A stretch of DNA of 64,000 nucleotides, from contig JANHCV010000004.1 in the NCBI GenBank assembly GCA_025594325.1, positions 2,449,225 through 2,513,224 on the forward strand, in the 5' to 3' direction. This document shows positions 1,067 to 45,520 of the stretch, one piece after another (the first letter of the stretch is position 1; the number at the start of each line of letters is the position of its first letter). The notes under the pieces are model-generated. The model worked only from the letters and a program-made list of their open reading frames with translations, did no database searches and had not been told where the DNA came from. The stretch is from Blastocladiella emersonii ATCC 22665 (taxonomy: Eukaryota > Fungi > Blastocladiomycota). The translations under genes and the position numbers were made by a program.

Positions 1067-2770
1067 TCAGATCAGCGCCGCCACGGCCACGAACACGGCG
1101 TCGGGGGCGGGCGCAATCAGGGGCATCTCGACGCGGCCGAAGAACTCGACCGCCATGGCCACGTTCTTGGCGTACGACCCCTTGACAGTCGACACCTCGG
1201 CCGTGCACAGCGTCGCCAGCACGGGCGCGACGAGCGGCACCATGCGGGGCGTGCAGTTGGCCGACGTCGCGGCCATCATCTTGTTCTCCATGAGCATCTT
1301 GATGCCCTTGGTCTTGTCGCACACGTTGTTGAGCGCCAGGATGCGCTTCAGCGCGCGGCGCTCGTGCGGCGCCATCGTGAACGCCTTGTCGGCGCCGATG
1401 AACTCGAGCGCGAGGCTGATTGCGTTCAGCGTTGAGAAGTCCGAGTTCGACCGGAGGCAGTGCTAGTGACGCGCGCACGTCGAGTGTTAGTGGGTGATCG
1501 CGGTCGACGACGAGATGAGGTGAGAGAAACGTACCTCGGCCACCCGGATCCATTTCTGGACGACCGCATCGTCCAGCGACGCGGCGCCCTTGACCGACAG
1601 CTTGACCAGGTTGTAGACCCCGGTGTGCACCGTGGTCTTGTTCTTCTCCTCGAGCACCTTGGCCACCGCGGACCCGAGCACCTTGGGGTCGGCCGACTCG
1701 ACGCCGCGAGCGGCCGCGCGGACCTTGTCGACGGTCTTGACGAGCTCGGACGCGGCGAGCGCGGTCAGCGCCTTGGCGAGGTCGCGCGACGGGACCTCGA
1801 GCACGAGGCGGGCGGCCTCGGCGCCCGCCGACGCGTCGCCCTGGTCGAGACCGTCGGCGCGCGTGACGATGCCCGCGACCTTGTTGAAGGCGAAGCGAGC
1901 GGCGCGACGCAGCTTCGAGTCCTTGGGCGTCTTGAGCGGCTTGGCCTGCTTGCCAGCCGGGGTGATGGGGGTCGAGATCTTGACAGCGGCGGTGTCGATC
2001 TCGAGGTGCAGCTGCTGCTCGGGGACCGTGAGCGGGACGACGGGGGTCTGTGGGATACGAGAGGAGGGTGTGTGAGCATGACTGAACATGAAGGAAAAGG
2101 AAGTCATCGAGTCGAGAGAACGTACCCCAGACAAGCTGAGCAGCGACGCCGAGGCGCGGAGGCACTTGAAGGGTGCCGCGAGCGCATCGACGACCTTGCC
2201 AGCGAACTTGTTGAAGATCGACAGGGGCTTGGAGGTCGAGGTGGCGGCCGCCGAGGGCGCGGGCACGAGGTGCTCCTGCGAGCCCGAGTCGGCGACGGCG
2301 AGGTCGGCCGCCAGGTGCTCGACCGCGTCCTCGTGAGAGTCAGCGGGAGCAAGGTCGGCGGCCGCGGGGGTGGTGGGGGTGGTCTCGGTCGTGGCGAGGG
2401 CCGACACCGAGTCGATCGAGGACGCCGAGATGAGCGACGCGGTCTCGGGCGCCGATACGAGCGGCGCGGCCTCGGGAGCCGATACGAGCGGCGCAGCCTC
2501 GATCGCCGACACGAGCGGCGCGATCTCGAGCGCGGGCACGAGCGGCGCGGCCTCGAGCGCGGGCACGAGCGGTGCGGGCTCGAGCTCGGACGTCTCGACG
2601 GCAATGATGCCCGTGGCCGGTTGGCCGACGGGGACGTACTGGATCTCTGGCATGCCCATGACGCGGTTCATCTCGAACCAGTCGCGCATCTCGAGGACAT
2701 GCCCGGAGAGGAAGAGGTGAGCGTCGCGGGTGAACCAGGTTGGAACGGGGTCTTGACCGTGGGCGGCCAT
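1067..2770 (-). CDS. Hypothetical protein with 9-aa tandem repeats; probably 2 introns (~2050-2120, ~1465-1533)
   Basis: ORF 1487..2770 starts in TTCACC-ATG context with host-like codon bias. A GTACGT...CTAAC...CTAG intron joins it to the exon read as ORF 1067..1375 (HCLRSNSDF...AVAALI*). Confidence 0.65.
2424..2585 (-). repeat. 27-bp coding minisatellite, ~6 copies (EAAPLV[P/S]A[L/P/I])
   Basis: Units such as GCCGATACGAGCGGCGCGGCCTCGGGA / GCGGGCACGAGCGGCGCGGCCTCGAGC repeated in tandem. Confidence 0.9.
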
Positions 2771-5299
2771 GGTGAAGACGTTGCGCGGTTGGTCGAACGA
2801 CGACTACACAAGGAGGCCGAGAGATGGACATCATGAGTGGTTGCCGCTCGACTAATCAAGCACAAAACGCGTAGCGTAACCGTGGGGGAAGACGCGCGGT
2901 TAGTCGAAACGACGACTACACGGGGAGGTCGAGGGTCAGTCGCTGTGAGTCGGCGCCGCTCTTCGACTCGAGCGCGCAGCGCGTACCGTAACCGTGCGGG
3001 AGGGAGGCAGGAGCGAAGACGACGGACTGGCCTGGGGCGAGGCTGGTCGGTCGGGGGTGCTTGCAGGAAGCGCAGAAGTGGCGGTGCCGAGGGTGCTGGG
3101 CCGTAGAAGTCGAGCCGTGGACGAGCGTCAAGACGATGACGACGAGGTGGTTCGTCGGCGGCGAAGGCGAGCTTGAACGGGAGCAGGTGGGCAGAGCCGG
3201 GTGCGCTGGATGCAGGCAAGTTGGGGTGTAACAACACTTGAAGCGTTGCGCCTGGAAATCCGTCGAGTCGATGCGGGTCGTGTTAACGAGGGTGCAAATG
3301 GCTGGCGGATGAGGAACATGGGAGAGCGGGGTTGGCGGGGTTGCGGGCAGTCATTTTGTACTGCGGGCAGTGTGTAGGGCTAGTGAGCGAGGTGAAGTCG
3401 AGGATTCGCGGTCGGTCACGACGACTGACTGACCGGCGAACGAGCGCGATGGTCAGCCGAGCGCCGCGCACCTGACCTGGAATGACCCTCGCTTTCACGG
3501 CTCGGCCGAAGCGAAAGCGGGTGATGCAGGAGGCTGAGCCGAAAGCGTGATGTCTCGCACCTCGGCACCGCCACGCGACGCGTAGCTGTTGCAGCAGAGC
3601 GCGGTGATCGGCCACGCCGCGGGATCAGCGAGCCGAGATCGCTGGTGCCCGCGCACCGTCACGATAGAGCTTCCTCCAGCGGGTTAATCTTCATCTCAGC
3701 GGTGCTTCATGCCCGCATCTCTGACGAAGTCGGCGAGAGAGCAAAAGACCCGATGCGCGGGCCCGCGCACGCCGTCGATCGTGCGGCCACTGGTCGAGCT
3801 GAGCGCGGAAGCATGGTCACCGATGGATAAGCTGCTCTCTCGCGCTCTCTCGCGCTCTCTCGCAACAGATACGGTCATAGGTCACCTGCAAGGCTTCCCC
3901 GTCGAGCGGCAGCTTGGCGGCGGGGAAGCGTGCACGAGCGCGAGTGTATGAGCGAGGGAGCGAGCGGGGGAGGGTCCAAGACCCATCGTGGGGCAATCGT
4001 GAGGATAGTCTCGGCAAGGGAAGGAGCAGGCGCGGCCGTGTGTAGCAGGAGAGGCAATGCGGTACCATAAGGTACGAGAGAGGAGGGGTGACCCGGCGCG
4101 GGGTACGAGTGAGGCGGTGGAGGGAGGGAAGCGCGCGACGAGGGCCTCGAGAACACCGATCCGTCATAGTTTCAGCAAGTGTTGACGAGGAAGATACATG
4201 GGAGCGCGCGGATCGGGTCAGTGCGTGTGTCGAGGGAAGCGGGAAGAGCGCGTCGGTCATACCGCGTGATGTGGCGCCGCCGCCGACCCCACGCTGCCCG
4301 GGCAACGCGTGCGTGCGCCGACGCGTGGGAGCCCACGTCAGGGGAACCGACCGCCCCCGTGGCGCAGCCGCCCTTGACCGCCGTCCCCACCACCAGCAAC
4401 GACTCACGGTACACAGAGCGCGAGCGGTAAGCGCGGTGTCCCGCGGGAGAAGACCGATCGCGCGACGCACCCCGTCCAGCCTTAAGCGCAAGACGACGCG
4501 CTGTCCGACTTATCGCATCCAGTACTAATTTCGGTAGAGACGGGTTTCGAGAGCTCAGGTCAGTCGAGGCGGGCGACGCGGCGAGCGGTAGTAGCCGTGA
4601 GGGTAGTGACGCGCGGGCCGCGCGGCCGGGGCGCAAGGTGACCGACCTCGCTGCACAGACCGCCCTTCATCGTCTCACTGCACATCGGACTCTCTCGCGT
4701 GTCAATCGAGGCTGCCGAGGCGGCCGAAACGGCGAGCGCCGGTAGCAGTGAGGGCGGGGACGCGCGCGGCCAGCATGGTCGCCTCACGCCCATCACCGAC
4801 CTCGAGCCCGCCCTCCTGCGCCTTCTTACACATCGAGATCGCATGCGCATGACGTTGCCGCACCTCGCCCATGCCGCGCGCGAGTGTCGCGACCGTTACG
4901 AGCGATCCAGCTGGCGTGGGAAGAGCTGTGATCGCGAAACTGATCATGTCGGGCTGCACGACGTTGCGGCGGTGCCCCGGGCGTCAGGGCCTCGGCGGGG
5001 TCGCGGGCAGTTGATTGCATGAAGCTACGAGTACGATTCATTTGAGTGGTGGAGTTGCGTTGGTGTAGGTGGAGAGCGGGGATGGGTTCCGTGCCACCTC
5101 GCCGACTTAGCCAACGCGTCGCGGTGGCCGCTCGCCAATCTTGCAGGCCTCCCCCTTCGACGCCGCGACCAAGGGACCTGCAGAAAATTTCTCTTAAGAT
5201 GCTTACATTGCTACGAAGCCCAAAAACCGGACCCTAGCCTCCGATCTCACACCCATCTCGCTCAGCTCCACATCGCCTCGCGCATGCGCGACCTTCGCT

Positions 5300-8093: not shown

Positions 8094-10313
8094 TCACTGC
8101 ACACTCTCCTGGACGACGAGGACGAAGGGAACAACGTCAGTTCATTGCGAGACGATGAAAATGTACACGCGAGGGCAGCGTACATCAACGGAAGCGGTCG
8201 GTGCGGGTGCTGAGTCGCTTGGCCGTGCTGGGACCGGAGCGACTGGGTCCGTGGTTGGCGCGGGATCGGCAACCGCTGTTTCGGACGCGGCTGCGGATGG
8301 CTCGAGCTCCTTGACGAGCGGTGGCGCTGGCGGTTGCTCGGGCGCGATGGCCTGCTCGGGCGCGGCGGCCTGCTCGGTAACGGGCTCCGCCGGCCCCGCC
8401 GTCGCCACCGTGGCAGGCGACGTCTGCATCGCGGCCTCGACCGCATCGAGCGGTATCCGGCGCAGCGCCGTGTTGATGTAGCTGACGGTGCTCTGCGTGC
8501 TGCCGAGCTCCCACTCGACGAGCTGGTGGAGGTTGGTGCGCAGCGAGGTTAGGCGGACGGCAAAGTCGATCTCGCTGGCCTCGGCCTCGTCGAGCCCGGA
8601 CCGGATCTCGCCGACGAGCGACATGGTGTCCTTGAGCAGCATGTCCATGGACAGGACCAGCGAGTCGGTGCGGTTGTGCCAGTCGTCGGACACGACGCGG
8701 TCGCGCGGCATGGCCGCGGTGCTGCTGACGAGTCTCGCGGACGGCGCAGCCGACGACGTCGACGCCGCGCTGCTGCTGCTCCCGCCCGCGTGCAGTGGGT
8801 GGTACATGTCGACGGTCGCGTCGAGCGGGTTCTCAAACTGCGTCGACGAGGAAGTGGACGGGCGCCGCGACCGCGACAGCGAGCCCGCGATCGAGTCGGC
8901 CGTCGACCCGCCAAGGTTCGACGACACCGAGTTGGCCATGGCGGCGGCCGTCGTGACGTTGGTGCGGATTGACTGGACGACTGTGGACGTCATGGCCTTG
9001 AGCTTCTGCGTGCCGCGCTCGGGCGTAGCGGCCGGCGCCGCGGCCGACTTGAGGTAGTATCGGACAAAGTCGCGCGCCGGGGACGCTGAGCGGCTGCGCT
9101 CCCCGCCGCCGCTGCTGCTCCCGGTGCGGTGCTGCGCAACGGGCGGCGTGATCGAGGCGGCGACAAAGTTCGAGTATGGGACCGTGTACATGCCCGAGGC
9201 GACCGTCGACATGCTGGCGATGCTCGAGGACGACGACGACGTGGACATGGTCTGGTGCGACTGGCGCCGGCCGCGGTGCAGCGACGCGGCCTCGCTGCCG
9301 CCGCTGGCGCCATCGGCCATGGACCGCAGCGAGCCCGACATGCGCGACGTCGACTGCGACCGCGGGACGTGATACGCGTGGCGCGACGGCAGCTCGGACG
9401 GCGGGTTGTCGTACGGGTACCCGGTGCTCGAGTTGAGCGAAGTGCCCGGGTCGGCTGGTTGCTGCGGCTGCTGCTGGTAGTGGCGCTCGTTGACGAGCCG
9501 CGGCGAAGCCGAAGCCGGCCGCTGCTGCTGCGCCGACGAACCCGACGAGGCGGCGATGCCCGAGTCCATGGCCGGGTCCTCCTCGGAGATGGACGAGGCC
9601 ATGTGCGCCGACCCGTGGTCGCTCCCGCGCGAGCTCGGGCGGTACGCGATCGGGTGGTGGTACGGCCAGCTCATCTCGCCGGGCGACGGCGCGGGCTGCG
9701 ACGACGGGGAGAGCGGGTGGTCCGCGTGCGACGCAATGACCTGGAGGTGCGACTGCGGGTGAGCCGCTTGCGATAGCGAGGCGGCAGAGCCACGTTCAAG
9801 CGAGGAACGGCGGTCGCTGACCTGCGCGGCCGAGGTGATCAGGCGCGGGGCATCGGAGGACGGCGTTTCCTTGGCGGCCCACGCTTGGCGCGGGACCGAG
9901 GCCGAGTATACGGCAGCGGCGTGGTCCGCGGTGGCGGTTGTCGGCATCCCCGTCGTCGTGTACGACGCGAACGGCGAGCCCGTCGAGACGAGAGTCGAGC
10001 GGGTGAGGTCCACGGCCGGTGCTCCCGCGGACTGCTGGCGGCGCACGGCCGATCGCACGTTCGGCGAGATGGGGACGGCGATGGAGCGGGCGTTGGGGTT
10101 GCCGCCGAACAGCTCGTCGAGGACGGGCCGCGCGCTGGAGACGAGCGACGAGGCGATTTCGCGGCCGACGACCATGCGTTCGCCGCCGCCGCGCCGCTTG
10201 TCCTCGTAGCCGGTGAGCGGCGGCGGCGTGGCCGAGTCCATGATGGCGGACTGGATCTCGGCGGCGGAGAGCACCTCGAACGAATCGGCCGAGTGCAGGG
10301 GTCTTGATGACAT
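8094..10313 (-). CDS. Hypothetical low-complexity Ser/Pro/Ala-rich protein with a C-terminal helical segment; probable 3' intron 8109-8183
   Basis: ATG at 10313 (MSSRPLHSADSFEVL) and host codon bias. The amphipathic segment DSLVLSMDMLLKDTMSLVGEIRSGLDEAE... lies near the C-terminus. A GTACGC...CTGAC...CAG intron gives terminal exon ESVQ*. Confidence 0.65.
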
Positions 10314-37750: not shown

Positions 37751-39526
37751 TCAAGAGGAGGCGGCGGGCAACATCGCAACATACATGGCCACGACGTTCC
37801 AGAAGTTGGCGTCCTGCATCGGGAGATGGCCGAGAACCTCGTCCACCGCCGCCTGGCAGCGCTCGACGCTGGACCCGGACAGGCGGTACACGTCGGCAAG
37901 CTCCGCTGCCATCGCTTGGTCGAGCGGGGTGCGCTGGTCGATGGCCGCATACAGCTGTATGAAGTCCTTGAGCTTCGGCAGCTCCCACCCGCGACCATGG
38001 ACGGCAGCGGCAATGTTCTTTGCGGCAAGCAACTGCATCTGGCGGTGGGAGGCGGCGTACGCGGCTGCAATGCAGGGAAGCGCTGCGAAGGGGAGTGGGA
38101 GGCGTGCCGTGGCTGGGTCCGAGTTTGAAGCAGTGGAAGCAGCGTTGACCATGGGTGGAGGGATCACCGCAGGCGGAGAAGCCACCATCGACAGAGCGGC
38201 CACCGCTGGCTCGACCTTTATCTTGCTGAGCGGCTTGTCAGGAAGCAAAGCAGTCGAGGCACGAGCGTTTGTTGCTGACGCATCGCATGCGTCGGCGGGA
38301 GCGGCGTGGCTGGCAGGAGCACCGGGTCGGGGCACAGTAGGATTGGCGGAAAGCGCGCTCGTTGAAGTAGCTGACGAGTGAGCAGCGGAGGCGGTATCGC
38401 GCGGCGCTGAGGCAGGAGTACGAGGCGGCCCGTCTTCATCGTCGACCACAACGGTTTCCACCTTGCGACGCTTGTTTGGCGGGTCGGTACGCTTCTGCGG
38501 CGAAAGGCGCGGCGGGTCGTTCCACTCGACGAGGGTAATCTTTGGTTTCTTGGAAGACGCCGTGGAAATCGTTGGTGGTGGGCCGACTACGCCTGAGAGC
38601 TCGTCAGTACGTATACGAGCCGTTCCGCTAACTGTTGAATGCGTACCCATAGGACTCCGGTCTTGGGCAGGAGCTTTCGCTGATGACGCTGGCGGAGCGA
38701 GCGAAGTCGACGGCATGGTATGGGATGAAGCGGTCGAGGAACCCGGTCGGTGAAGCGTCGAATGAGCCGAGATGATTGGTTCCTGGGGCTGCGGCTGCGG
38801 CTGCTGAGGTGGCGGTAGTGGAGAAGCGCTCGGACGGGGAGGTGCGAGATCGAGATCGAACGGCTTGAACTCGACGTGGAAGGCATTGCCGAGTTCGTTG
38901 CGAGTGATAATGAGACCAGCAGGAGCAAAGTAGCGACCCACGCCAAAAGCCGAGTGATGGACGGGAGCGTCGACGCTGAAACCCCGGGCCCCGAGACAGC
39001 AGCAGCGAAGGTACCACCCAACGAAGGCATCGAGGATCTGGGTGAGACTGCGGCCGCTCGAGGCGGCACTTGCACGCAGATTGGAGCAAAGGATAGACTT
39101 GTCGTTCTGCTGGACGTCGGTGAACTCGCGAGGACGGTCGAGGAGCGAGTCGTGTGGCGAGTTGACAACGGCAGAGCAAACGATTGATCCCAGCGAAAGA
39201 AGCGAGTCAAATGTAGCGGCAGATTTACCTTCGAGTCGCCTCAGGCCGTCCGAGACGAGAGCGAGCATCTCCATGCGCAGCGCGCGCGACTCGAAAGGTG
39301 TGACGCTGTTGGACACGACGCGGATGTCGTGGCGGTTCAAGTATGTGGCCTCCTGGCCCACCGGTACAGCAAGAAGTGCCTGGTCCTTGACGACAACAGC
39401 CTCGGGGAACGCCGAAGCCGAGGTGAGCACGCGGCGACGTGGCCGCGCGGTAGCAAGGGCCGCCTCGCGCAGTTTCTGCAACGGCTGCGATGACACTGGG
39501 TTGCTCGATAACATGGAAAGTTGCAT
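37751..39526 (-). CDS. Unknown two-domain protein, tandem paralog 3 of 3
   Basis: 591-aa ORF; WYLRCCCLGARGF; RGWE...LADVYRLS...DANFWNVVAM; NKRRKV. Confidence 0.75.
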   Translation of the reverse strand: MQLSMLSSNPVSSQPLQKLREAALATARPRRRVLTSASAFPEAVVVKDQALLAVPVGQEATYLNRHDIRVVSNSVTPFESRALRMEMLALVSDGLRRLEGKSAATFDSLLSLGSIVCSAVVNSPHDSLLDRPREFTDVQQNDKSILCSNLRASAASSGRSLTQILDAFVGWYLRCCCLGARGFSVDAPVHHSAFGVGRYFAPAGLIITRNELGNAFHVEFKPFDLDLAPPRPSASPLPPPQQPQPQPQEPIISAHSTLHRPGSSTASSHTMPSTSLAPPASSAKAPAQDRSPMGTHSTVSGTARIRTDELSGVVGPPPTISTASSKKPKITLVEWNDPPRLSPQKRTDPPNKRRKVETVVVDDEDGPPRTPASAPRDTASAAHSSATSTSALSANPTVPRPGAPASHAAPADACDASATNARASTALLPDKPLSKIKVEPAVAALSMVASPPAVIPPPMVNAASTASNSDPATARLPLPFAALPCIAAAYAASHRQMQLLAAKNIAAAVHGRGWELPKLKDFIQLYAAIDQRTPLDQAMAAELADVYRLSGSSVERCQAAVDEVLGHLPMQDANFWNVVAMYVAMLPAASS

Positions 39527-39799
39527 GTAGTGCAGTTTCGAGGGCTAAAGCCCTCTATTTTGCCTAGCCGACGCGCGCCCTTGGGATCTGACGTGTCTCC
39601 CTGGCCCACGTGCGTCACGCACGTGTTTCACGCGTTTCACGGGATATAACCAACGCGTACGAGTCTCTCACCACCAAGCTCTCTCGCCTGCAGTCAATCG
39701 TGATAGTAACAAAAAAAAATCAAATATTGTGAATGAGAGGACAGCAACAACAAAAGAGGGAAACGGAGGAAGTGGAGAGAGGAACACGACGTCGTTCAG

Positions 39800-41060
39800 T
39801 TAACTGCGGCCGGCGCGGCGGCGGCGGCGCTTGGGGACCGCCTCAAACTCGTCCTCGTCGTCGTCACCGCCCTCCTCGGTGGCCATGGCGGCCGTGCGCT
39901 TGGGCGCGTCAGCGGGAACGGCCGTGGCCGACGCGACCTCGCGATCCGTCGTGCCTGCCTCCTTGATGATGGGCGCCGCGAGCGTGACTGTCGCACTTGA
40001 AGTCGACGACGACGACGACGCGGCCGACGAGCCGACCGGCGGCCCGGCGGGCTGTACGGCGGTCAAGAGCGTCGAGGTCGACGACGACGAGGCGACGGTC
40101 GCGTCGACCCGCGAAACGGCGGGCTGCACGGCGGTCGAGGATGACGACGACGCGTTGGTCATCTGCGGTGCGGCGGTCTGCACGGCCGTCGTTGAGGAGG
40201 ACGACGAGGCGACGCCGTCGTTGAGCTCGCGCAGGATCCCCGCCATGCGCGTCGTGAACTCGGGGTCCGAGTCGCCCTCCTCGTCGGACACATCAAACAC
40301 GAGCCGCGGCTGGCGCACGGGCGAGGACAACGTCAGCCCCGACAGCTGCGTGGCCGGGGTCGGCGGGATGCACTCCTGCGGGCGGGCGCCGTACGGATTG
40401 CTGCGGCCCGTGGGACCGCCGTGATAGTGCGCCGGCGGCGGCAGAGCGGGCGCCGACGAAGAGCCCGCGGGACCACCGTGATGGTGATGGTGGGCGAGGC
40501 CGTCGACGGCTGCTGCGGCGGGACGGCGGGCGTCGACGACGAGGCGGGCGCCGACGACGAGGAAGAGGGGGTGGAGGGCGGGTTGAAGTACGAGGCCGGC
40601 GGGGGCATGGCGGGCGCCGTGGGCGCCGAAGGCGGCGGCGCCGGCGTGGTGATCTTCTGCTGCAGCTGCTGCTGCACCTGCGCAATGAAGTCGAACGGGA
40701 TGCCGAGCGCCGCCATGTCCACGGTGACAACGAGGTGGTAGGGCAAGGGCATGGTGACGAGCACGTTGTTGTTGTATACCTCGGAAATGAGCTCGATGGT
40801 CATCGCGTCCATCTCGTACACGTGCACCTGCACACCCTGCATGCAGACGAACACGGGGCGCAGGTAGAGGTTGCCGGTCACGCTGAGAGTGAAGCCCTTG
40901 GCAGCATTCCGGCGCCGCGTGAGGCGGTCGAACAGATGCCACCCGGGCGTGCCGACCGCGGGCGACTTGACGAGCATCATCGAGGTGCGCGCGAGGATCG
41001 GGTCGGGGACAGGGGGGCCCGGCGCGGCGCGCGGCGGCTCGACGTACTGGATCGCGGCGC
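39800..41060 (-). pseudogene. 5'-truncated, frameshifted cargo ORF inside the Helitron-like element
   Basis: Host-like codon bias from ~41060 (IQYVEPPRAAPG...MLVKSPAVGTPGWHLFDRL...) to ~40490, continuing in another frame (HHHHGGPAG...KRRRRRAGRS*, ends 39800). Globular N-part, low-complexity C-part. Confidence 0.6.
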
Positions 41061-41065
41061 ACACC

Positions 41066-42583
41066 ATGTCGCCGTATGGCGGCTGCACCGTCATGCTCGC
41101 CGGCGACCATTTGCAGCTTCCACCAGTGAACGGCACGGCGCTGTTCCAGCTACCCGAGGTGCTCGACGATGCGCCAGACTCGTTCTTTGAGCGGCTGCTC
41201 GCGTACGACACCACGGGCTCGAAAAAAAAGCACTCAGGACAGCTCGCGTACTGGCGCGCGCGACGTGTCGTTCGACTCGTGCCCAGCAACCGGTTCGTCA
41301 ACGGCCCATCATGGGGCAGGTGTCTCGACGCGTTCCGGCTCGACAAGGCCCCTGACGAGCTGCGCCGCCTGCCCGACTCGCGCACGACCGCTCGCCTGCG
41401 CCAGCTGAGCGACGACCAGGGCAACTACGCGCTCAAGAAGATCCTCCAGACGCGCGGGCTCACGGTCATTGCGCCCAACAACTACACGCGTCACACCTTC
41501 AACCTGCTGTACACGCGGCTCGCCGCTGCGGACCCAGAACGCGTCGTGTTTCAGATCAAGGCCAGCATCACGCGCAAGAAGGAGCGAAACGGCGCAACCG
41601 TCCGCCTCCCGATTGGCGAAAGGGACCTGTTCCGTCTCGCCGAGGAGCCCGACTCGATCACTCGTTTGCCAACCATCCTCGAGGTCTTTGTCGGCATGGA
41701 AGTGCGCGTCAAGGTCAACCAGTGCGTCGAGAAGGGGTGCGCGAATGGCGCTATTGGCATCGTGCACCACATTGACTGGTTTCCGGGCACGACGTTTACC
41801 GAGACCGGCTCGCGCATGTACCGCCCATCGCGGGAGCCACATACTGTGTGGATCTACCTGCCCGACGCGCCGCCTGGCCCTCGGTTTCCTGGCATGCCGG
41901 CCGATTGGCCAGACACGGTCATCCCGCTCGCCATGCACTCGGACGACCTTCTCTACAAGGAGGGCGGTATGACGTCGCGCGAGCGAACCGAACCCAAGAA
42001 ACCCGAGTCCAGCGCACTGTGTGCCAAGATGGTCAATAAGTTTAAGACTCACGAGCAGTACAAGGATCACGAAAAGATCAAGATCAAGCAGTTCTCAATC
42101 GTGCCCGCCTTTGCGATGACGGTGCACGGGGTCCAAGGCGTGACCAAGAACGCCATCATCTTGACGGATCCGTGCCCAGCCGGCTCGTCTGGATCGATCA
42201 ACGGGTCGTCGCTGTACGTTGCGCTCTCGCGGCTCCGCGAGAGCGCGTGTCTGTGGGTTCTCCATCCGATCCCGGACAGCGTGTACGACGCCATGGTCCC
42301 TGATCCGCGGGCCGTGGCCGAAGACTTGCGGCTCCAGGCGCTAGACGTGTTGACTGAGGGCGCGTTCGCTCACGGACAAACCGTTTCGCACAACCACCCC
42401 CGAGTCGCGGAGCTCTTTTGCCACGCGATGCAAGAGCACCGCCAGATCAAGAGCGACAAGGAGGCGAAGCAGAAGGCGCGCGACCAAGAGTACTCAAGGC
42501 GGTATCGCGAGAGTAAGCGCGAGCAGAAGCGCGCTCCAGAATTGCATGAGCAGCGGCGGAGCAAGAGGCTTCGCGAGCTTTAG
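41066..42583 (+). pseudogene. PIF1-family (SF1B) helicase, C-terminal two-thirds; lacks Walker A/B
   Basis: PYGGCTVMLAGDHLQLPPV (motif III), LEVFVGMEVRVKVN...GCANGAIGIV, FAMTVHGVQGVT (motif V), LYVALSRLR (motif VI). No GxxGxGK(S/T) or DE motif upstream. Confidence 0.85.
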
Positions 42584-42918
42584 TGTGTTAAAAAGTATAC
42601 TTAGCTGCTCTTAATTATTTTGGTGTGTGATGGGAACAAAGATGCGACCCCATAATGACGCGCGACTGTCAGCGGTACAAAACCTCCCGCGTGTGCCGTG
42701 CTCCAACGTGGCGGAGGGCTTTAGCCCTCGATTGAAGACCAGACGCGAAGCGTCTAGGTGGTTCAAGTAAAATTGGATTGTGGAAAGTGGAGAGAGAGGA
42801 GAGCGGAGAGCACTCGAACGGCAACCGACGCGTAGAACGTGTGAAAAGGACATCACGTTGCCGAGCGCGAAACGCACACGGCTCCCCCCGTCCCCCACGC
42901 ACTCGCTCACCCACTGCA

Positions 42919-45306
42919 ATGACATACTACGACGACGATCGAGACGTGCGAGAAGTCATAGAGGAGGTTCTTCGCACCCACAAGTTCCCAGACTGCCACT
43001 GCGATCCCGGCGGCGAGGGCTGCGAGCGGTGCTGGTCGATCCGCCAGGAGTACATCAAGTTGCAGCAGCAGCAGCAGACGCTACCACCTCGTCGCGCTCC
43101 CGTGCTCATGCCCGCCGACCAGGCCCCCAAGCTCGGGACCTTCTAACAGCCGCTGTACTCGTGGGCCAACCCGTCAGCCAAGGCGCTCGCCCGAGCGTCC
43201 GAGCCCGACCCCGGCCTTGCACCGCTGATCAGGGGCGGCGACCAGTGCACCCTCTTCGCGATGCGGGTGGCCGGGTGGATCTGCGGCAACTGCCCGGCCG
43301 CCCGAGCCGAGTTCGACAGCGCCGCGGGGTGCCCGCGCGTGTGGGTGTGCGACGAGTTTGCCGTGTACATTGTCCCCTCAAACGCGTTCCAATCGCCGCT
43401 CCCGCTCGACTCGGTCCGTGTGACCACCACGCAGCGGTACGAGCAGCCCGCCAATTCGACGGCGTCGCTGCCGTCCGAGACCGCGTCGGAGGCTGCCCCG
43501 CCGCGCATCGACTCCATTGACCTCATGGCCGACGGCCTCGTCTCTTGTGACCCCAAGCTCGACGCGGTCGTCACGCAGCCGTCGGCGGGCGACGTCGAGC
43601 CCATGCAGTGCGACACGGGCGACCCCGCTCGCCAGCGCAAACGGCCTCGGAGTCGCAGTCTCTCGCCCGCCGCCGTTGCCGCGGGCCCGCCGCTCGTCGC
43701 GAAGCGGTCCCGCACCGACCTCCCGCTCGCCGCCAACTCGCTCCTCAGCCCGCGCGCCGCCCTCGCCCTCACCGGCGCCAACTCGCTGCCCACGCCGCCA
43801 TCGGGGCCCGGGCTTACCGCACCCGCGCCGCTGCCGCCCGTCGCACCCGCACCGCTGCCGATGCAACCACCTGCCGCGCCCATCTTCAACCCGCCGTCGA
43901 GGCCGCCAAGGCCGAGGCCCAGGCCGCCCTGCCTGACGCCCGCGCGGCGCTCGCCGAGGGGGCCAAGGCGGCTGCTGACGCCAAGGCCAAGCGCATCAAG
44001 GCGCGGGCGACGCTCATGGTCGACAAGCGCCGGTGGGACCGGTACCTGTGGTTCTCGTACCAGGTCTTCCAGCCCAAGTACGTGTACGGCGTGTCGGCCG
44101 ACGGTAAGCTGTTCAACTCGTTCTCGGGCACCGTGGAGACCAACGGCTACGAGATCCGCATGATCGACTACAAGGGCGGCATGCGGCTCGAGGGCCTCAA
44201 GCTCGCGCTCGGTCTTCCGCAAGGTGGTCAGCGCGTGTCGACGGCCGGCGTCGCGCACGACCCGCTCGACGAGGTCATGTCCGGGACCGAGCGGATTGAG
44301 CCCTCGCCCAGCGCGCGCGCGCCCATGGCCATCCACCGCGGCCTCATTGCGCTTCGGCCAGGTCAAGCGCTCGTCGGCATGGACCCCGGTGTCCAGCGGC
44401 AGTACGTGGCCGTGCACTTCACCACGTTCGACATCGTGCTCATCAAGCAGCTCAAGGAGTCGCTCGCGTCGGCCACGACGCCCGCCGAGCGCGAGGCCAT
44501 CGCCGCCGAGCTGCACGAGGTCGTCTTCAAGCTCGTGCGCGACCGCGACCGGTACCAGGCGTGCTCGCGCAAGCACTACAACCACGAGGTCGGCAACAAC
44601 CTGCGCGTGCATCTCGTGCGCCTGTGGCGCAAGAAGTACGGCCTGCCCGAGATCGACCTCAAGCTCTCGCGCCTCGCCGGCTCGCTGTTCCAGTACACGC
44701 TCGCCGCCACGCAGGCGCTGCCAAAGTACCTCGCCTACGCCTTTGACCGCCGACTCGCCCGCCTCAAGTTCTTCCTCGACGGCAAGGAGCGTCAGTGGTG
44801 GACCGACATGGGCAACGGCCTCAAGTCGTGCGACGCGGGCGGCGCTGCAGCTGGGGCCGTGCTGCTCATCGGCCGCAACTTTGGGAACTTTAGCATGATC
44901 TCGTCTCCGTCGCGCGCGCCCGTCGTCAGGGGGGCTAAGCCCCCCTGCCGTCGTCAAGATGGCGCGGAAGATGCGCGGCCAGCACGTGGACACGCACCTG
45001 GTGAACGAGAACTTCTCGTCGCAGCGCTGCGCTCCGTGCACCGCCGCCTTCCCCGAGCTCGCCAAGGACAAGTCGCGCAACATGGCCAAGCCCAAGGACG
45101 GCCGGCACGCGACGCTGCGCTGCCCGCAGTGCCGCGACCAGCGCAACCGCGACGTCAACGCGGCGCTCAACATTGTGCTGTTCAACATTGACATTGACAA
45201 GATTGTGTTCGTCGACGGCAACCCGCTCGACGACCAGGTCTTCGCCCCCCTCGTGCTCGCCGAGCGCGCGCGTCACCGCGCGACCCCCGCGACCACCACC
45301 GCCTAG
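42919..45306 (+). pseudogene. Fanzor1 (TnpB-derived RuvC RNA-guided endonuclease), disrupted by a stop (43144-43146), a 1-nt frameshift (~43892) and a 28-bp insertion (44920-44956)
   Basis: FSGTVETNGYEIRM (F..xI.TDG-like), RuvC-I LVGMDPG (D at 44382), IGRNFGNF...SRAPVV, RuvC-II LVNENFSSQRCAPC (E at 45007), CPQC, RuvC-III NRDVNAALNI (D at 45151). Removing the three lesions gives one ~786-aa frame. Confidence 0.88.
44920..44956. repeat. 19-bp palindromic insert flanked by 9-bp direct repeats
   Basis: CCGTCGTCA-GGGGGGCTAAGCCCCCCTG-CCGTCGTCA; perfect stem CAGGGGGGC/GCCCCCCTG with a TAA loop. Confidence 0.9.
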
Positions 45307-45520
45307 GTCCGCTCCCTGTCGCGCGTCATCGGCTTCGGGGGTTTCCTCGACCCGCCGTTTGGGCGCGCGCTCGTTCGGCCGTGTGCATCATCATCCTCGC
45401 CGCTCCCATCAGTCCCGCCCTGCGCGCGACCGGGTGTCTGGCGTCTCACGTCCATGGGTTTGGGCGGGCCAAGTAAAGCTCTTGAGCCCGTGGTGGTTTT
45501 TGTGTATCGTTGTCAAAATA
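45307..45520 (+). ncRNA. Candidate Fanzor omegaRNA / element right end
   Basis: Non-coding interval directly 3' of the Fanzor stop. Contains stem-loops (GGC..GGGT-TTCCTCG-ACCC-GCC near 45331-45356; CGGGC-CAAG-TAAAGCT-CTTG-A-GCCCG at 45465-45490) followed by GGTGG-TTTTT. The call is positional inference only. Confidence 0.45.

What the first reader, a model, noticed from the sequence alone, without database searches (positions are those of the whole stretch)
39536..42763. Helitron2/Helentron-type element defined by palindromic asymmetric terminal inverted repeats
An exact 18-bp inverted repeat (39538-39555 / 42714-42731), each copy a GAGGGC-TAAA-GCCCTC hairpin, brackets a PIF1 helicase fragment. 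The 5' copy follows TTT. The 3' copy is followed 9 nt later by a stem-loop with a GAA triloop and then GGTGG|TT (seen). A terminal 5' repeat, a subterminal 3' repeat just upstream of a hairpin, T-rich insertion sites and no TSD are the hallmarks of Helitron2/Helentron rather than canonical TC...CTRR Helitrons (established). This would be a non-autonomous deletion derivative (inference).
Basis: partly seen in the sequence, partly recalled or inferred. Interest (0 to 1): 0.75.

Follow-up and report, generated by a model that had tools for sequence, protein, structure and literature searches.

The report
Defective Helitron2-type transposon copy

Summary
The 18-nt perfect inverted repeat is real (39538-39555 / 42714-42731). 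Its hairpin core occurs 70 times in this 32.65-Mb genome and 0 times in the reversed control. The genome is Blastocladiella emersonii ATCC 22665.

The end design matches the published Helitron2/HLE2 layout and resembles FoHeli1/2 of Fusarium:
- a 5' terminal repeat that is itself a hairpin;
- its inverted copy subterminal at the 3' end;
- a GAA-triloop stem-loop 9 nt later, then a short tail.

The window copy derives from a 4.9-kb element by an internal deletion. It lacks Rep and helicase motifs I-II, and a second complete copy with the same rearrangement sits at another locus. Degraded Rep (HUH) pieces are joined to the same termini elsewhere. The helicase's nearest long relatives are RepHel proteins, many with the HLE2 marker DUF6570 and none with the Helentron endonuclease.

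Eleven of 12 complete copies have no target duplication. One has a 9-12-bp duplication, confirmed by a paralogous empty site.

I found no intact autonomous copy. The scan has already reported this family many times on other DNA of this genome. Verdict: new member of a known kind, low interest.

The parts
39538..39555 (+). 5' terminal inverted repeat (ATIR), TC + GAGGGC-TAAA-GCCCTC, which is itself a hairpin. The element's first base is T at 39538, or C at 39539 if the T belongs to the host.
   Evidence: flanks of 24 distinct copies diverge immediately before TC. Fold.
39556..40698 (+). 5' module shared with the 4.9-kb 'A-type' copies (their positions 1-1215). No sense-strand gene. It carries the C-terminal two thirds of an antisense ORF.
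   Evidence: blastn 85-94% to L001-L007.
39800..41094 (-). Antisense orphan ORF. It has a globular-looking N-terminal part, a Pro/Ser/Thr-rich middle, and an acidic stretch ending in KRRRRR. It is broken here by a frameshift near 40495. It is open in one frame in sister copy L005, and open over all of the part that the 5'-truncated L030 retains.
   Evidence: No Pfam hit, no Atlas look-alike, no parental gene elsewhere in the genome. No excess of synonymous changes between copies.
40699..41070 (.). 372-bp segment present only in this copy, L005 (C16:1149102-1152435) and the 5'-truncated L030 (C15). It encodes the antisense ORF's N-terminal part and marks the internal rearrangement or deletion junction.
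41071..42583 (+). C-terminal remnant of the Pif1-like helicase of a RepHel transposase, from just before motif III (MLAGDHLQLPPV) to the stop codon. Rep, the linker and helicase motifs I-II are deleted.
   Evidence: Relatives.
42714..42731 (+). 3' subterminal inverted repeat (3' ATIR), GAGGGC-TTTA-GCCCTC + GA. It ends 42 nt from the element end.
42732..42766 (+). Extended 3' stem-loop TTGAA.ACC.AGACGC-GAA-GCGTCT.GGT.TTCAA. The core GAA-triloop hairpin is at 42741-42755.
   Evidence: -16.2 kcal/mol, z -4.2; 93.8% of cells paired across 26 copies, with one G:C to A:T double change in 4 copies.
42767..42773 (+). 3' tail GTAAAAT. Homology between copies ends after the T at 42773, and that T may belong to the host.

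Best explanation
Window 39538-42773 is a non-autonomous, internally deleted copy of a Helitron2-type (HLE2, endonuclease-less) rolling-circle transposon family of Blastocladiella emersonii.

Inferred mechanism, by analogy with characterised Helitrons:
- A RepHel transposase supplied in trans recognises the 5' hairpin repeat and nicks at the TC end with its HUH/tyrosine Rep domain.
- Its Pif1-like helicase peels off one strand 5' to 3'.
- The 3' signal (inverted copy of the 5' repeat, then the GAA stem-loop and the ...CAAGTAAAA tail) sets the end point.
- The single strand is pasted next to a T that follows an A/T-purine dinucleotide, normally without a target duplication.

Shown here: the ends, the family, the deletion structure, the lack of a TSD, the link to Rep and helicase sequences, and the kinship to RepHel proteins.

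Inferred only: the nicking and peeling steps, the role of the hairpins, and which enzyme moved it.

This copy cannot move itself. It has no Rep and no helicase motifs I-II, and its antisense ORF is frameshifted.
For: Family and ends:
- 70 hairpin sites against 0 in the control; at least 41 3' ends; 18 close 5' ends.
- Flanks diverge exactly at TC... and after ...AAGTAWAAT in 24 and 35 distinct copies.
- The layout equals the Helitron2 definition: 5' ATIR 0-2 bp from the end and forming a hairpin, 3' ATIR subterminal upstream of a hairpin, 5' T (PMC3627910).
- It is close to FoHeli1/2, where TCAGCC-GAA-GGCTG is a hairpin ATIR and the 3' ATIR lies 38-51 bp from the end (PMC5148889).

No TSD in 11 of 12 complete copies, this one included.

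Deletion derivative:
- Window element positions 2-1162 and 1535-3237 match L001 positions 1-1215 and 3217-4938.
- The same rearrangement is complete at a second locus (L005, 93%) and 5'-truncated at a third (L030). The derivative was therefore mobilised in trans.

Transposase link:
- The sister ORF hits PIF1 at 6.4e-12.
- Rep fragments sit in the same elements as family helicase pieces and 3' termini (L017, L019), or behind a family 5' end (L018/L021). They carry the motifs F.LTPNP and EETQARHTLHSH; the HUH is intact in L018.

Kinship:
- The exhaustive search gives 2980 hits.
- All 26 nearest long ones have PIF1, 16 have Helitron_like_N, 12 have DUF6570 and 0 have Exo_endo_phos.
- Their consensus shows the HUH motif, CRxxFPR, YxxKYxTK and the same linker motif as L001.
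- HELIANO names DUF6570 as the HLE2 marker (PMC11417382).

Rolling-circle-type arrangements: a head-to-tail junction ...CAAGTATAAT|CGAGGGC (L008), and copies 6-34 bp from each other's ends.
Against: - No intact autonomous copy (Rep + helicase between these termini) was found in the assembly. Even the 4.9-kb copies lack Rep and have frameshifted helicases.
- Rep hits for this family are weak: 18-28 bits against a cut-off of 28.9.
- DUF6570 was not detected beside the family's own Rep fragments. Clade placement therefore rests on relatives' domain content, not on a tree.
- The literature rule 'insert between T and T' could not be confirmed. There is a T at both junctions, but only one T at the tandem junction. 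The one empty site found is ambiguous and shows a TSD.
- The 5' TC start and the purine|T junction also recall canonical Helitrons.
Confidence: 0.9

Rival explanations
1. It is a cut-and-paste TIR transposon (DDE-type) that happens to carry a PIF1 fragment. The 18-nt repeats would be its TIRs.
For: A perfect 18-nt inverted repeat. One sister copy (L001) has a real 9-12-bp target duplication.
Against: The repeats are asymmetric: the 5' one is terminal, while the 3' one lies 42 nt inside the end and is followed by a conserved hairpin and tail. Eleven of 12 copies lack any TSD. No DDE domain appears in the element ORFs scanned. Rep/HUH fragments and RepHel-type helicases go with these ends.
Confidence: 0.02
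2. It is a canonical (Helitron1/HLE1) or hybrid Helitron rather than Helitron2. It would start with TC and insert before a T after a purine, like the A|T rule.
For: A 5' TC in 22 of 24 copies. Position -2 is A/T in 24 of 24 and position -1 is a purine in 23 of 24. A T follows the 3' end.
Against: The 3' end is ...AAGTAWAA(T), not CTRR. It has a 5' hairpin and asymmetric terminal inverted repeats, which Helitron1 lacks (PMC3627910). The nearest RepHel relatives often carry DUF6570, reported as HLE2-specific. FoHeli1/2, accepted as Helitron2-like, also start with TC.
Confidence: 0.05
3. It is the left part of a composite Helitron2-Fanzor unit running from 39538 to about 45500, with a second Helitron-like terminus after the Fanzor gene.
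For: A Fanzor/TnpB-like pseudogene lies just downstream (42919-45306; earlier notes). Fanzor1 genes are known cargo of Helitron2 elements in Chlamydomonas (PMC3627910). CAAGTAAA and GGTGGTT recur at 45470-45497.
Against: The full 18-nt tail matches only once in the window, even with 3 mismatches allowed. No ATIR and no GAA hairpin lie near 45470. Homology to the other Fanzor copies starts only at window ~42908, 134 bp past the Helitron end. In all other copies the flank changes right after the terminal T.
Confidence: 0.03

Closest known systems
FoHeli1/FoHeli2 of Fusarium oxysporum (Chellapan et al. 2016, PMC5148889)
   Same: It starts with TC. The 5' inverted repeat is itself a short hairpin, and its inverted copy lies subterminally at the 3' end (38-51 bp from the end there; 42 nt from its end to the terminus here). 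GAA loops occur in the terminal hairpins. The tail is A/T-rich. Elements are about 5-6 kb. There is no regular TSD, and a T lies at the 3' junction.
   Different: The repeat and tail sequences differ (GAGGGC-TAAA-GCCCTC and ...CAAGTAAAA(T), against TCAGCC-GAA-GGCTG and ATATTTT). The 5' flank preference is A/T-purine rather than TNAT. The host is a blastocladiomycete, not an ascomycete. No intact RepHel copy was found here, and no circle junction was tested.
Helitron2 group as defined by Bao & Jurka 2013 (PMC3627910), e.g. Helitron-1_CRe and CRe-1/2/3
   Same: Asymmetric terminal inverted repeats, hairpins at both ends, a 5' T, and RepHel without an endonuclease. Copies occasionally have variable-length TSDs (7-19 bp there; one 9-12-bp case here).
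   Different: This family carries no Fanzor cargo; the neighbouring Fanzor is separate. Phylogenetic membership was not tested with reference sequences.
Helentrons and their non-autonomous HINE/DINE-1 derivatives (Thomas et al. 2014, PMC4067079)
   Same: Palindromic subterminal inverted repeats, a 3' stem-loop, T at the boundaries, and frequent deletion derivatives and clustering.
   Different: No AP-endonuclease domain is present in the family ORF or in its 26 nearest long relatives. The TT target was not demonstrated.
Second Helitron2-type element in the same genome (L013, C2:~727236-733030)
   Same: The same architecture: a 15-nt perfect ATIR (TCAGCTGTAGCTTTA) terminal at the 5' end and subterminal at the 3' end, then a hairpin 9 nt later. 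It has Rep + PIF1 in a 1479-aa frame.
   Different: The end sequences are unrelated. The helicase is only about 30-34% identical and there is no Rep cross-hit. It is probably not the enzyme source for this family.

Membership tests
Helitron2 / HLE2 | 5' inverted repeat (ATIR) 0-2 bp from the 5' end | tested here: met
   The repeat starts at the first base (TC GAGGGC...). Flanks diverge right before it in 24 copies.
Helitron2 / HLE2 | 5' ATIR pairs with adjacent bases to form a 5' hairpin | tested here: met
   GAGGGC-TAAA-GCCCTC, -5.6 kcal/mol, z -3.2.
Helitron2 / HLE2 | 3' ATIR subterminal, immediately upstream of a 3' hairpin | tested here: met
   42714-42731, with the hairpin starting 9 nt later. 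The ATIR ends 42 nt from the element end. Conserved in 26 aligned copies, with 93.8% of cells paired.
Helitron2 / HLE2 | No target-site duplication as a rule | tested here: met
   Eleven of 12 complete copies have none beyond the chimeric-flank control. One exception is confirmed by an empty site. Rare TSDs are also reported for Helitron2.
Helitron2 / HLE2 | Insertion between T and T | tested here: inconclusive
   A T is at both junctions in nearly all copies. But a single T lies at the head-to-tail junction. The one empty site is ambiguous because its target starts with T and is followed by TC.
Helitron2 / HLE2 | Autonomous members encode RepHel (HUH Rep + Pif1-like helicase) | tested here: inconclusive
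   The helicase is present in the family (PIF1 6.4e-12). Rep fragments with an HUH motif are joined to family termini. No intact copy was found.
Helitron2 / HLE2 | RepHel falls in the HLE2 clade (DUF6570 as marker) | tested here: inconclusive
   Twelve of the 26 nearest long relatives, including the best one, carry DUF6570. It was not detected beside this family's own Rep fragments. No reference tree was built.
Helentron | AP-endonuclease domain fused C-terminally to RepHel | tested here: not met
   The family ORF ends about 130 aa after the helicase with no Exo_endo_phos hit. None of the 26 relatives has it.
Canonical Helitron (Helitron1 / HLE1) | 5' TC and 3' CTRR ends, a single 3' hairpin, no terminal inverted repeats, A|T target | tested here: not met
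   TC is present, but the 3' end is ...AAGTAWAA(T). A 5' hairpin and ATIRs are present. The 5' flank is A/T-purine.
Cut-and-paste TIR (DDE) transposon | Symmetric terminal inverted repeats, fixed-length TSD, DDE transposase | tested here: not met
   The repeats are asymmetric. No regular TSD. No DDE domain in the element ORFs scanned.

The most novel reading that the evidence does not exclude
The family may still be mobile although no autonomous copy is visible. Two pairs of Rep-less 4.9-kb copies differ by 1 nt in 4,940 and 4 nt in 4,862, and the identity stops at the element ends. One of these copies made a 9-12-bp target duplication.

That would mean one of two things. Either a functional RepHel with different or unassembled termini cross-mobilises these elements, or there is a second integration route that leaves staggered cuts. 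The conserved antisense orphan gene could be an unrecognised accessory factor.
Probability: 0.2. Interest if true: 0.5.

Novelty: new member of a known kind. Interest (0 to 1): 0.22.

Why it matters
It gives a correct, base-level annotation of one copy of the main Helitron2-type family of Blastocladiella emersonii. I found no paper describing Helitrons in this fungus: only one paper in the library holds both words, and judging by its title and abstract it is about Mucoromycotina genomes.

The result extends the hairpin-ATIR end design known from Fusarium to an early-diverging, zoosporic fungal lineage. It supplies clean termini for masking and annotating the genome. It also shows that the database's 'hypothetical protein' models, and a 'rad14' model, include pieces of this element.

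Locally, the insertion sits 11 nt upstream of the ATG of the neighbouring gene (ORF 37751-39526, minus strand), so it separates that gene from its former upstream region.

Beyond that it is an ordinary dead transposon copy, and the scan has already described the family repeatedly on other DNA of this genome.

Tried and rejected
Empty site for the window copy:
- The 3' flank matches other loci only from window ~42908, the start of the Fanzor repeat.
- The 5' flank has only 77% paralogs, which stop at the gene's ATG.

Empty sites for other copies:
- Joined flanks against all fetched DNA gave only artefacts.
- The L004/L017 shared repeat starts 52 nt from the junction.
- Both C12 arms carry the insertion.
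- The L003, L025 and L026 flanks are unique or only partly repeated.
- The L006 flank contains the end of another repeat, 196 bp from the junction.
- Only L001 succeeded.

Other negative results:
- Stacked 5' hairpins at C4:674585-674650 are not a clean nested insertion. What follows the complete element is not the rest of the interrupted one.
- Captured host gene: the antisense ORF's globular part exists only inside three element copies. It has no Pfam or Atlas match, and copies show no purifying selection.
- The second Helitron terminus after the Fanzor is rejected.
- L013's RepHel as partner is unlikely: only distant similarity and different ATIRs.

Limits:
The DUF6570/Rep loci at C21:864714, C19:540751, C1:1431905, C16:305887 and C6:687302 were therefore not read.
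I asked for no more.
Full report
OBSERVATION

The repeat finder reports arms 39538-39555 and 42714-42731: 18 nt, 100% complementary, 3158 nt apart. The 16-nt core GAGGGCTWWAGCCCTC occurs twice in the window against none in 100 shuffles. It occurs 70 times in the 32.65-Mb genome against none for the reversed control pattern. Many sites form TAAA...TTTA pairs 3.2-4.9 kb apart. Each arm folds as a 6-bp/4-nt hairpin.

ORGANISM

The best outside match of the element's helicase is a Blastocladiella emersonii ATCC 22665 protein on a 2,021,495-bp contig. That equals the length of contig C18 of the window's genome. Other top hits are 'hypothetical proteins' of the same strain.

TRUE ENDS

I fetched about 45 loci holding copies and compared them.

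- 5' end: flanks diverge directly before TC-GAGGGC-TAAA-GCCCTC in 24 distinct copies.
- 3' end: homology runs through the inverted copy, 11 nt of spacer, AGACGC-GAA-GCGTCT, and then AGGTGGTTCAAGTAAAAT. One subfamily has AGGTGCCTCAAGTATAAT instead. Homology breaks after the final T in about 35 copies.
- The window element is therefore 39538-42773.
- The GAA hairpin is the tip of a longer interrupted stem (TTGAA.ACC.AGACGC / GCGTCT.GGT.TTCAA), at -16.2 kcal/mol and z -4.2.
- Across 26 aligned termini, 93.8% of pair cells are standard pairs, against 25-41% when partners are slid. One pair shows a G:C to A:T double change in four copies, probably a single event. Conservation is mostly at the sequence level.

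TARGET SITE

- Position -2 before the boundary T is A (18) or T (6), never G or C, in a 67%-GC genome. Position -1 is G (13), A (10) or T (1). The window copy is the one exception.
- The base after the 3' T shows no strong preference.
- Eleven of 12 complete copies, the window copy included, have no flanking duplication beyond what chimeric flank pairs give.
- A T stands at both junctions, and a head-to-tail junction in L008 has one T only (...CAAGTATAAT|CGAGGGC). I could not decide whether the element includes the 5' T, the 3' T or neither.
- Copies also sit 6, 11 and 34 bp from each other's ends.

ONE REAL EMPTY SITE, WITH A SURPRISE

The 5' flank of copy L001 (C17:284945-289882) matches C17:311392-311690 at 91%, right up to the insertion point. 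Its 3' flank matches C17:311682-311790. The two flanks therefore overlap by 9 bp at the uninterrupted paralog.

Base by base:
- empty site: ...CGCAG TCGCGAACTG TCTCGC...
- filled site: ...CGCAG TCGCGAGCTG [TC...AAAA] TCGCGAACTG TCTCGC...

This single copy has a genuine 9-12-bp target duplication. It is the same 12/14 match that stood out. Bao & Jurka reported variable 7-19-bp TSDs for some Helitron2 elements (PMC3627910). This is not the consistent TSD that would point to a cut-and-paste element.

WHAT THE WINDOW COPY CONTAINS

It derives from a 4.9-kb 'A-type' element.
- Window element positions 2-1162 match L001 positions 1-1215.
- Positions 1535-3237 match L001 positions 3217-4938.
- About 2 kb is missing. 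In its place are 372 bp (40699-41070) found only in this copy, in L005 and in the 5'-truncated L030.
- L005 is complete, sits at another locus with different flanks, and is 93% identical over the full length. The rearranged derivative was therefore itself copied.

On the plus strand the copy keeps only the helicase from just before motif III (MLAGDHLQLPPV) to the stop at 42583.

On the minus strand, 41094 down to 39800 encodes an orphan ORF.
- It has a globular-looking start, a Pro/Ser/Thr-rich middle and a KRRRRR end.
- It is open in one frame in L005, and open over all of the part that L030 retains. Here it is frameshifted near 40495.
- It has no Pfam match, no Atlas look-alike, and no copy outside the elements.
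- The three copies differ at only 10-13 of 570 nt, mostly nonsynonymously. Selection is not shown.

LINK TO A ROLLING-CIRCLE TRANSPOSASE

- The long sense ORF of A-type copies hits PIF1 (6.4e-12) and has no Rep domain.
- About 90 residues of that ORF, including motif III, are read out of frame in L001. Even the 4.9-kb copies are defective.
- The genome has 12 Helitron_like_N matches.
- The ones related to each other lie in the same elements as family helicase pieces and 3' termini (L017, L019), or 2.65 kb behind a mutated family 5' end (L018/L021).
- They show the motifs F.LTPNP and EETQARHTLHSH. The HUH is H-S-H in L018 and H-S-R in L017. A CRF-like stretch follows.
- Pfam scores for these fragments are weak: 18-28 bits.

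The exhaustive protein search with the L001 ORF gave 2980 hits. I examined the 26 longest of the top 150.
- All have PIF1, 16 have Helitron_like_N, 12 have DUF6570 and none has an endonuclease domain.
- Their consensus shows ExQGRGxLHxHxLxW, CRxxFPR and YxxKYxTK. It also shows the linker HPxxxTH...VVPxxxGPRLPD...LFxPFR, which L001 also carries.
- HELIANO reports DUF6570 as specific to HLE2 (PMC11417382).
- DUF6570 is present in this genome beside other Rep loci, but was not detected beside this family's Rep fragments.

COMPARISON WITH THE LITERATURE

The Helitron2 definition (PMC3627910) is met point by point:
- 5' ATIR 0-2 bp from the end, forming a hairpin;
- 3' ATIR subterminal, upstream of a hairpin;
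- a 5' T;
- no endonuclease.

FoHeli1/2 of Fusarium have nearly the same design: TC start, hairpin ATIR, GAA loop, and the 3' ATIR 38-51 bp from an A/T-rich end (PMC5148889). The HLE2 'T|T' rule and the Helentron endonuclease are, respectively, unconfirmed and absent here. The only paper in the library that holds both 'Blastocladiella' and 'Helitron' is, by its title and abstract, about Mucoromycotina genomes.

AGE AND ACTIVITY

- Over the shared 3' 1.7 kb, copies are 96-97% identical in a star-like pattern. The window copy is the most diverged or nearly so, at 95.7-96.5%.
- L001/L002 differ by 1 nt in 4,940 and L025/L026 by 4 in 4,862, with identity ending at the element ends.
- That points to very recent copying (or conversion confined to the element) of Rep-less elements. 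Yet no intact RepHel of the family was found.
- The only near-intact RepHel in the genome (L013) belongs to a distant family. It has its own 15-nt ATIRs and hairpin. Its last helicase motifs are in another frame.

NEIGHBOURHOOD

- The element starts 11 nt upstream of the ATG (39526) of a 591-aa minus-strand ORF.
- A Fanzor pseudogene lies downstream (earlier notes). It is not joined to the Helitron: repeat homology begins at ~42908. The alleged second terminus near 45470 is just an 8-mer plus GGTGGTT.

LIMITS

I requested no more.
- No reference phylogeny was built.

VERDICT

Four corrections apply: the 3' end, the target preference, the Helentron label, and the occasional TSD. This is a new member of a known kind. 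The scan has already reported it many times on other DNA of this genome, and it is of low general interest.

Noticed in passing
L001 (G000:C17:284945-289882) and L046 (C17:311682-311690): This sister copy is flanked by a 9-12-bp target duplication (TCGCGARCTG). A 86-91% paralogous empty site 22 kb away holds the sequence once. It is the only one of 12 complete copies with a TSD.
   Followed up: yes
L001/L002 (C17:284945-289882 and 322253-327190); L025/L026 (C20:1389323-1394183 and 1089603-1094463): Pairs of Rep-less 4.9-kb copies are 99.98% and 99.92% identical, and the identity stops at the element ends while the flanks differ. This implies very recent copying without a visible autonomous partner.
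   Followed up: partly
L013 3737-9540 (G000:C2:~727236-733040): A different Helitron2-type element. It has perfect 15-nt ATIRs (TCAGCTGTAGCTTTA), a 3' hairpin GTGTGTGC-GCA-GCACACAC, and a 1479-aa Rep+PIF1 frame. Its last helicase motifs are in a second frame (8981-9316).
   Followed up: partly
L043 186-250 (G000:C4:674585-674650): Three 5' terminal hairpins are stacked within 65 bp, upstream of a complete 4.08-kb B-type copy. It is not a clean nested insertion, and its origin is unexplained.
   Followed up: partly
L008 1478-1556 (G000:C3:1034477-1034555); L027 516-600; L023 5432-5520: Head-to-tail arrangements of family members at 0, 6 and 11 bp spacing. The 0-bp junction reads ...CAAGTATAAT|CGAGGGC with a single T.
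   Followed up: partly
window 42908-45306: A Fanzor/TnpB-like pseudogene unit lies downstream of the Helitron. Its DNA homology to two other copies (C15:1332724, C1:1895790) begins at ~42908, 134 bp past the Helitron end.
   Followed up: partly
window 37751-39526 (minus strand): A 591-aa ORF whose ATG lies 11 nt from the Helitron 5' end. It has 77% paralogs at C1:2601478 and C1:2630710, in inverted orientation.
   Followed up: no
L018 2568-9530 (G000:C3:~528000-535000): A nest of other transposons behind a mutated Helitron 5' end: what reads by eye like a Harbinger/PIF-type transposase N-terminal fragment (not scanned against Pfam), a gag-like ORF with a CCHC knuckle, and long ORFs on the opposite strand (not characterised).
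   Followed up: no
L006 1267-1370 (G000:C17:459866-459969): A ~104-bp sequence is repeated more than 35 times in the genome. It often occurs as inverted pairs 15-21 kb apart (e.g. C20:705447/721116, C7:696372/712005), which suggests the ends of a large element.
   Followed up: no
P0001 (contig C18), P0004 and cluster members: Deposited gene models include pieces of this Helitron's helicase. They include one named 'DNA repair protein rad14' and several 'hypothetical proteins'. These are likely annotation chimeras.
   Followed up: no
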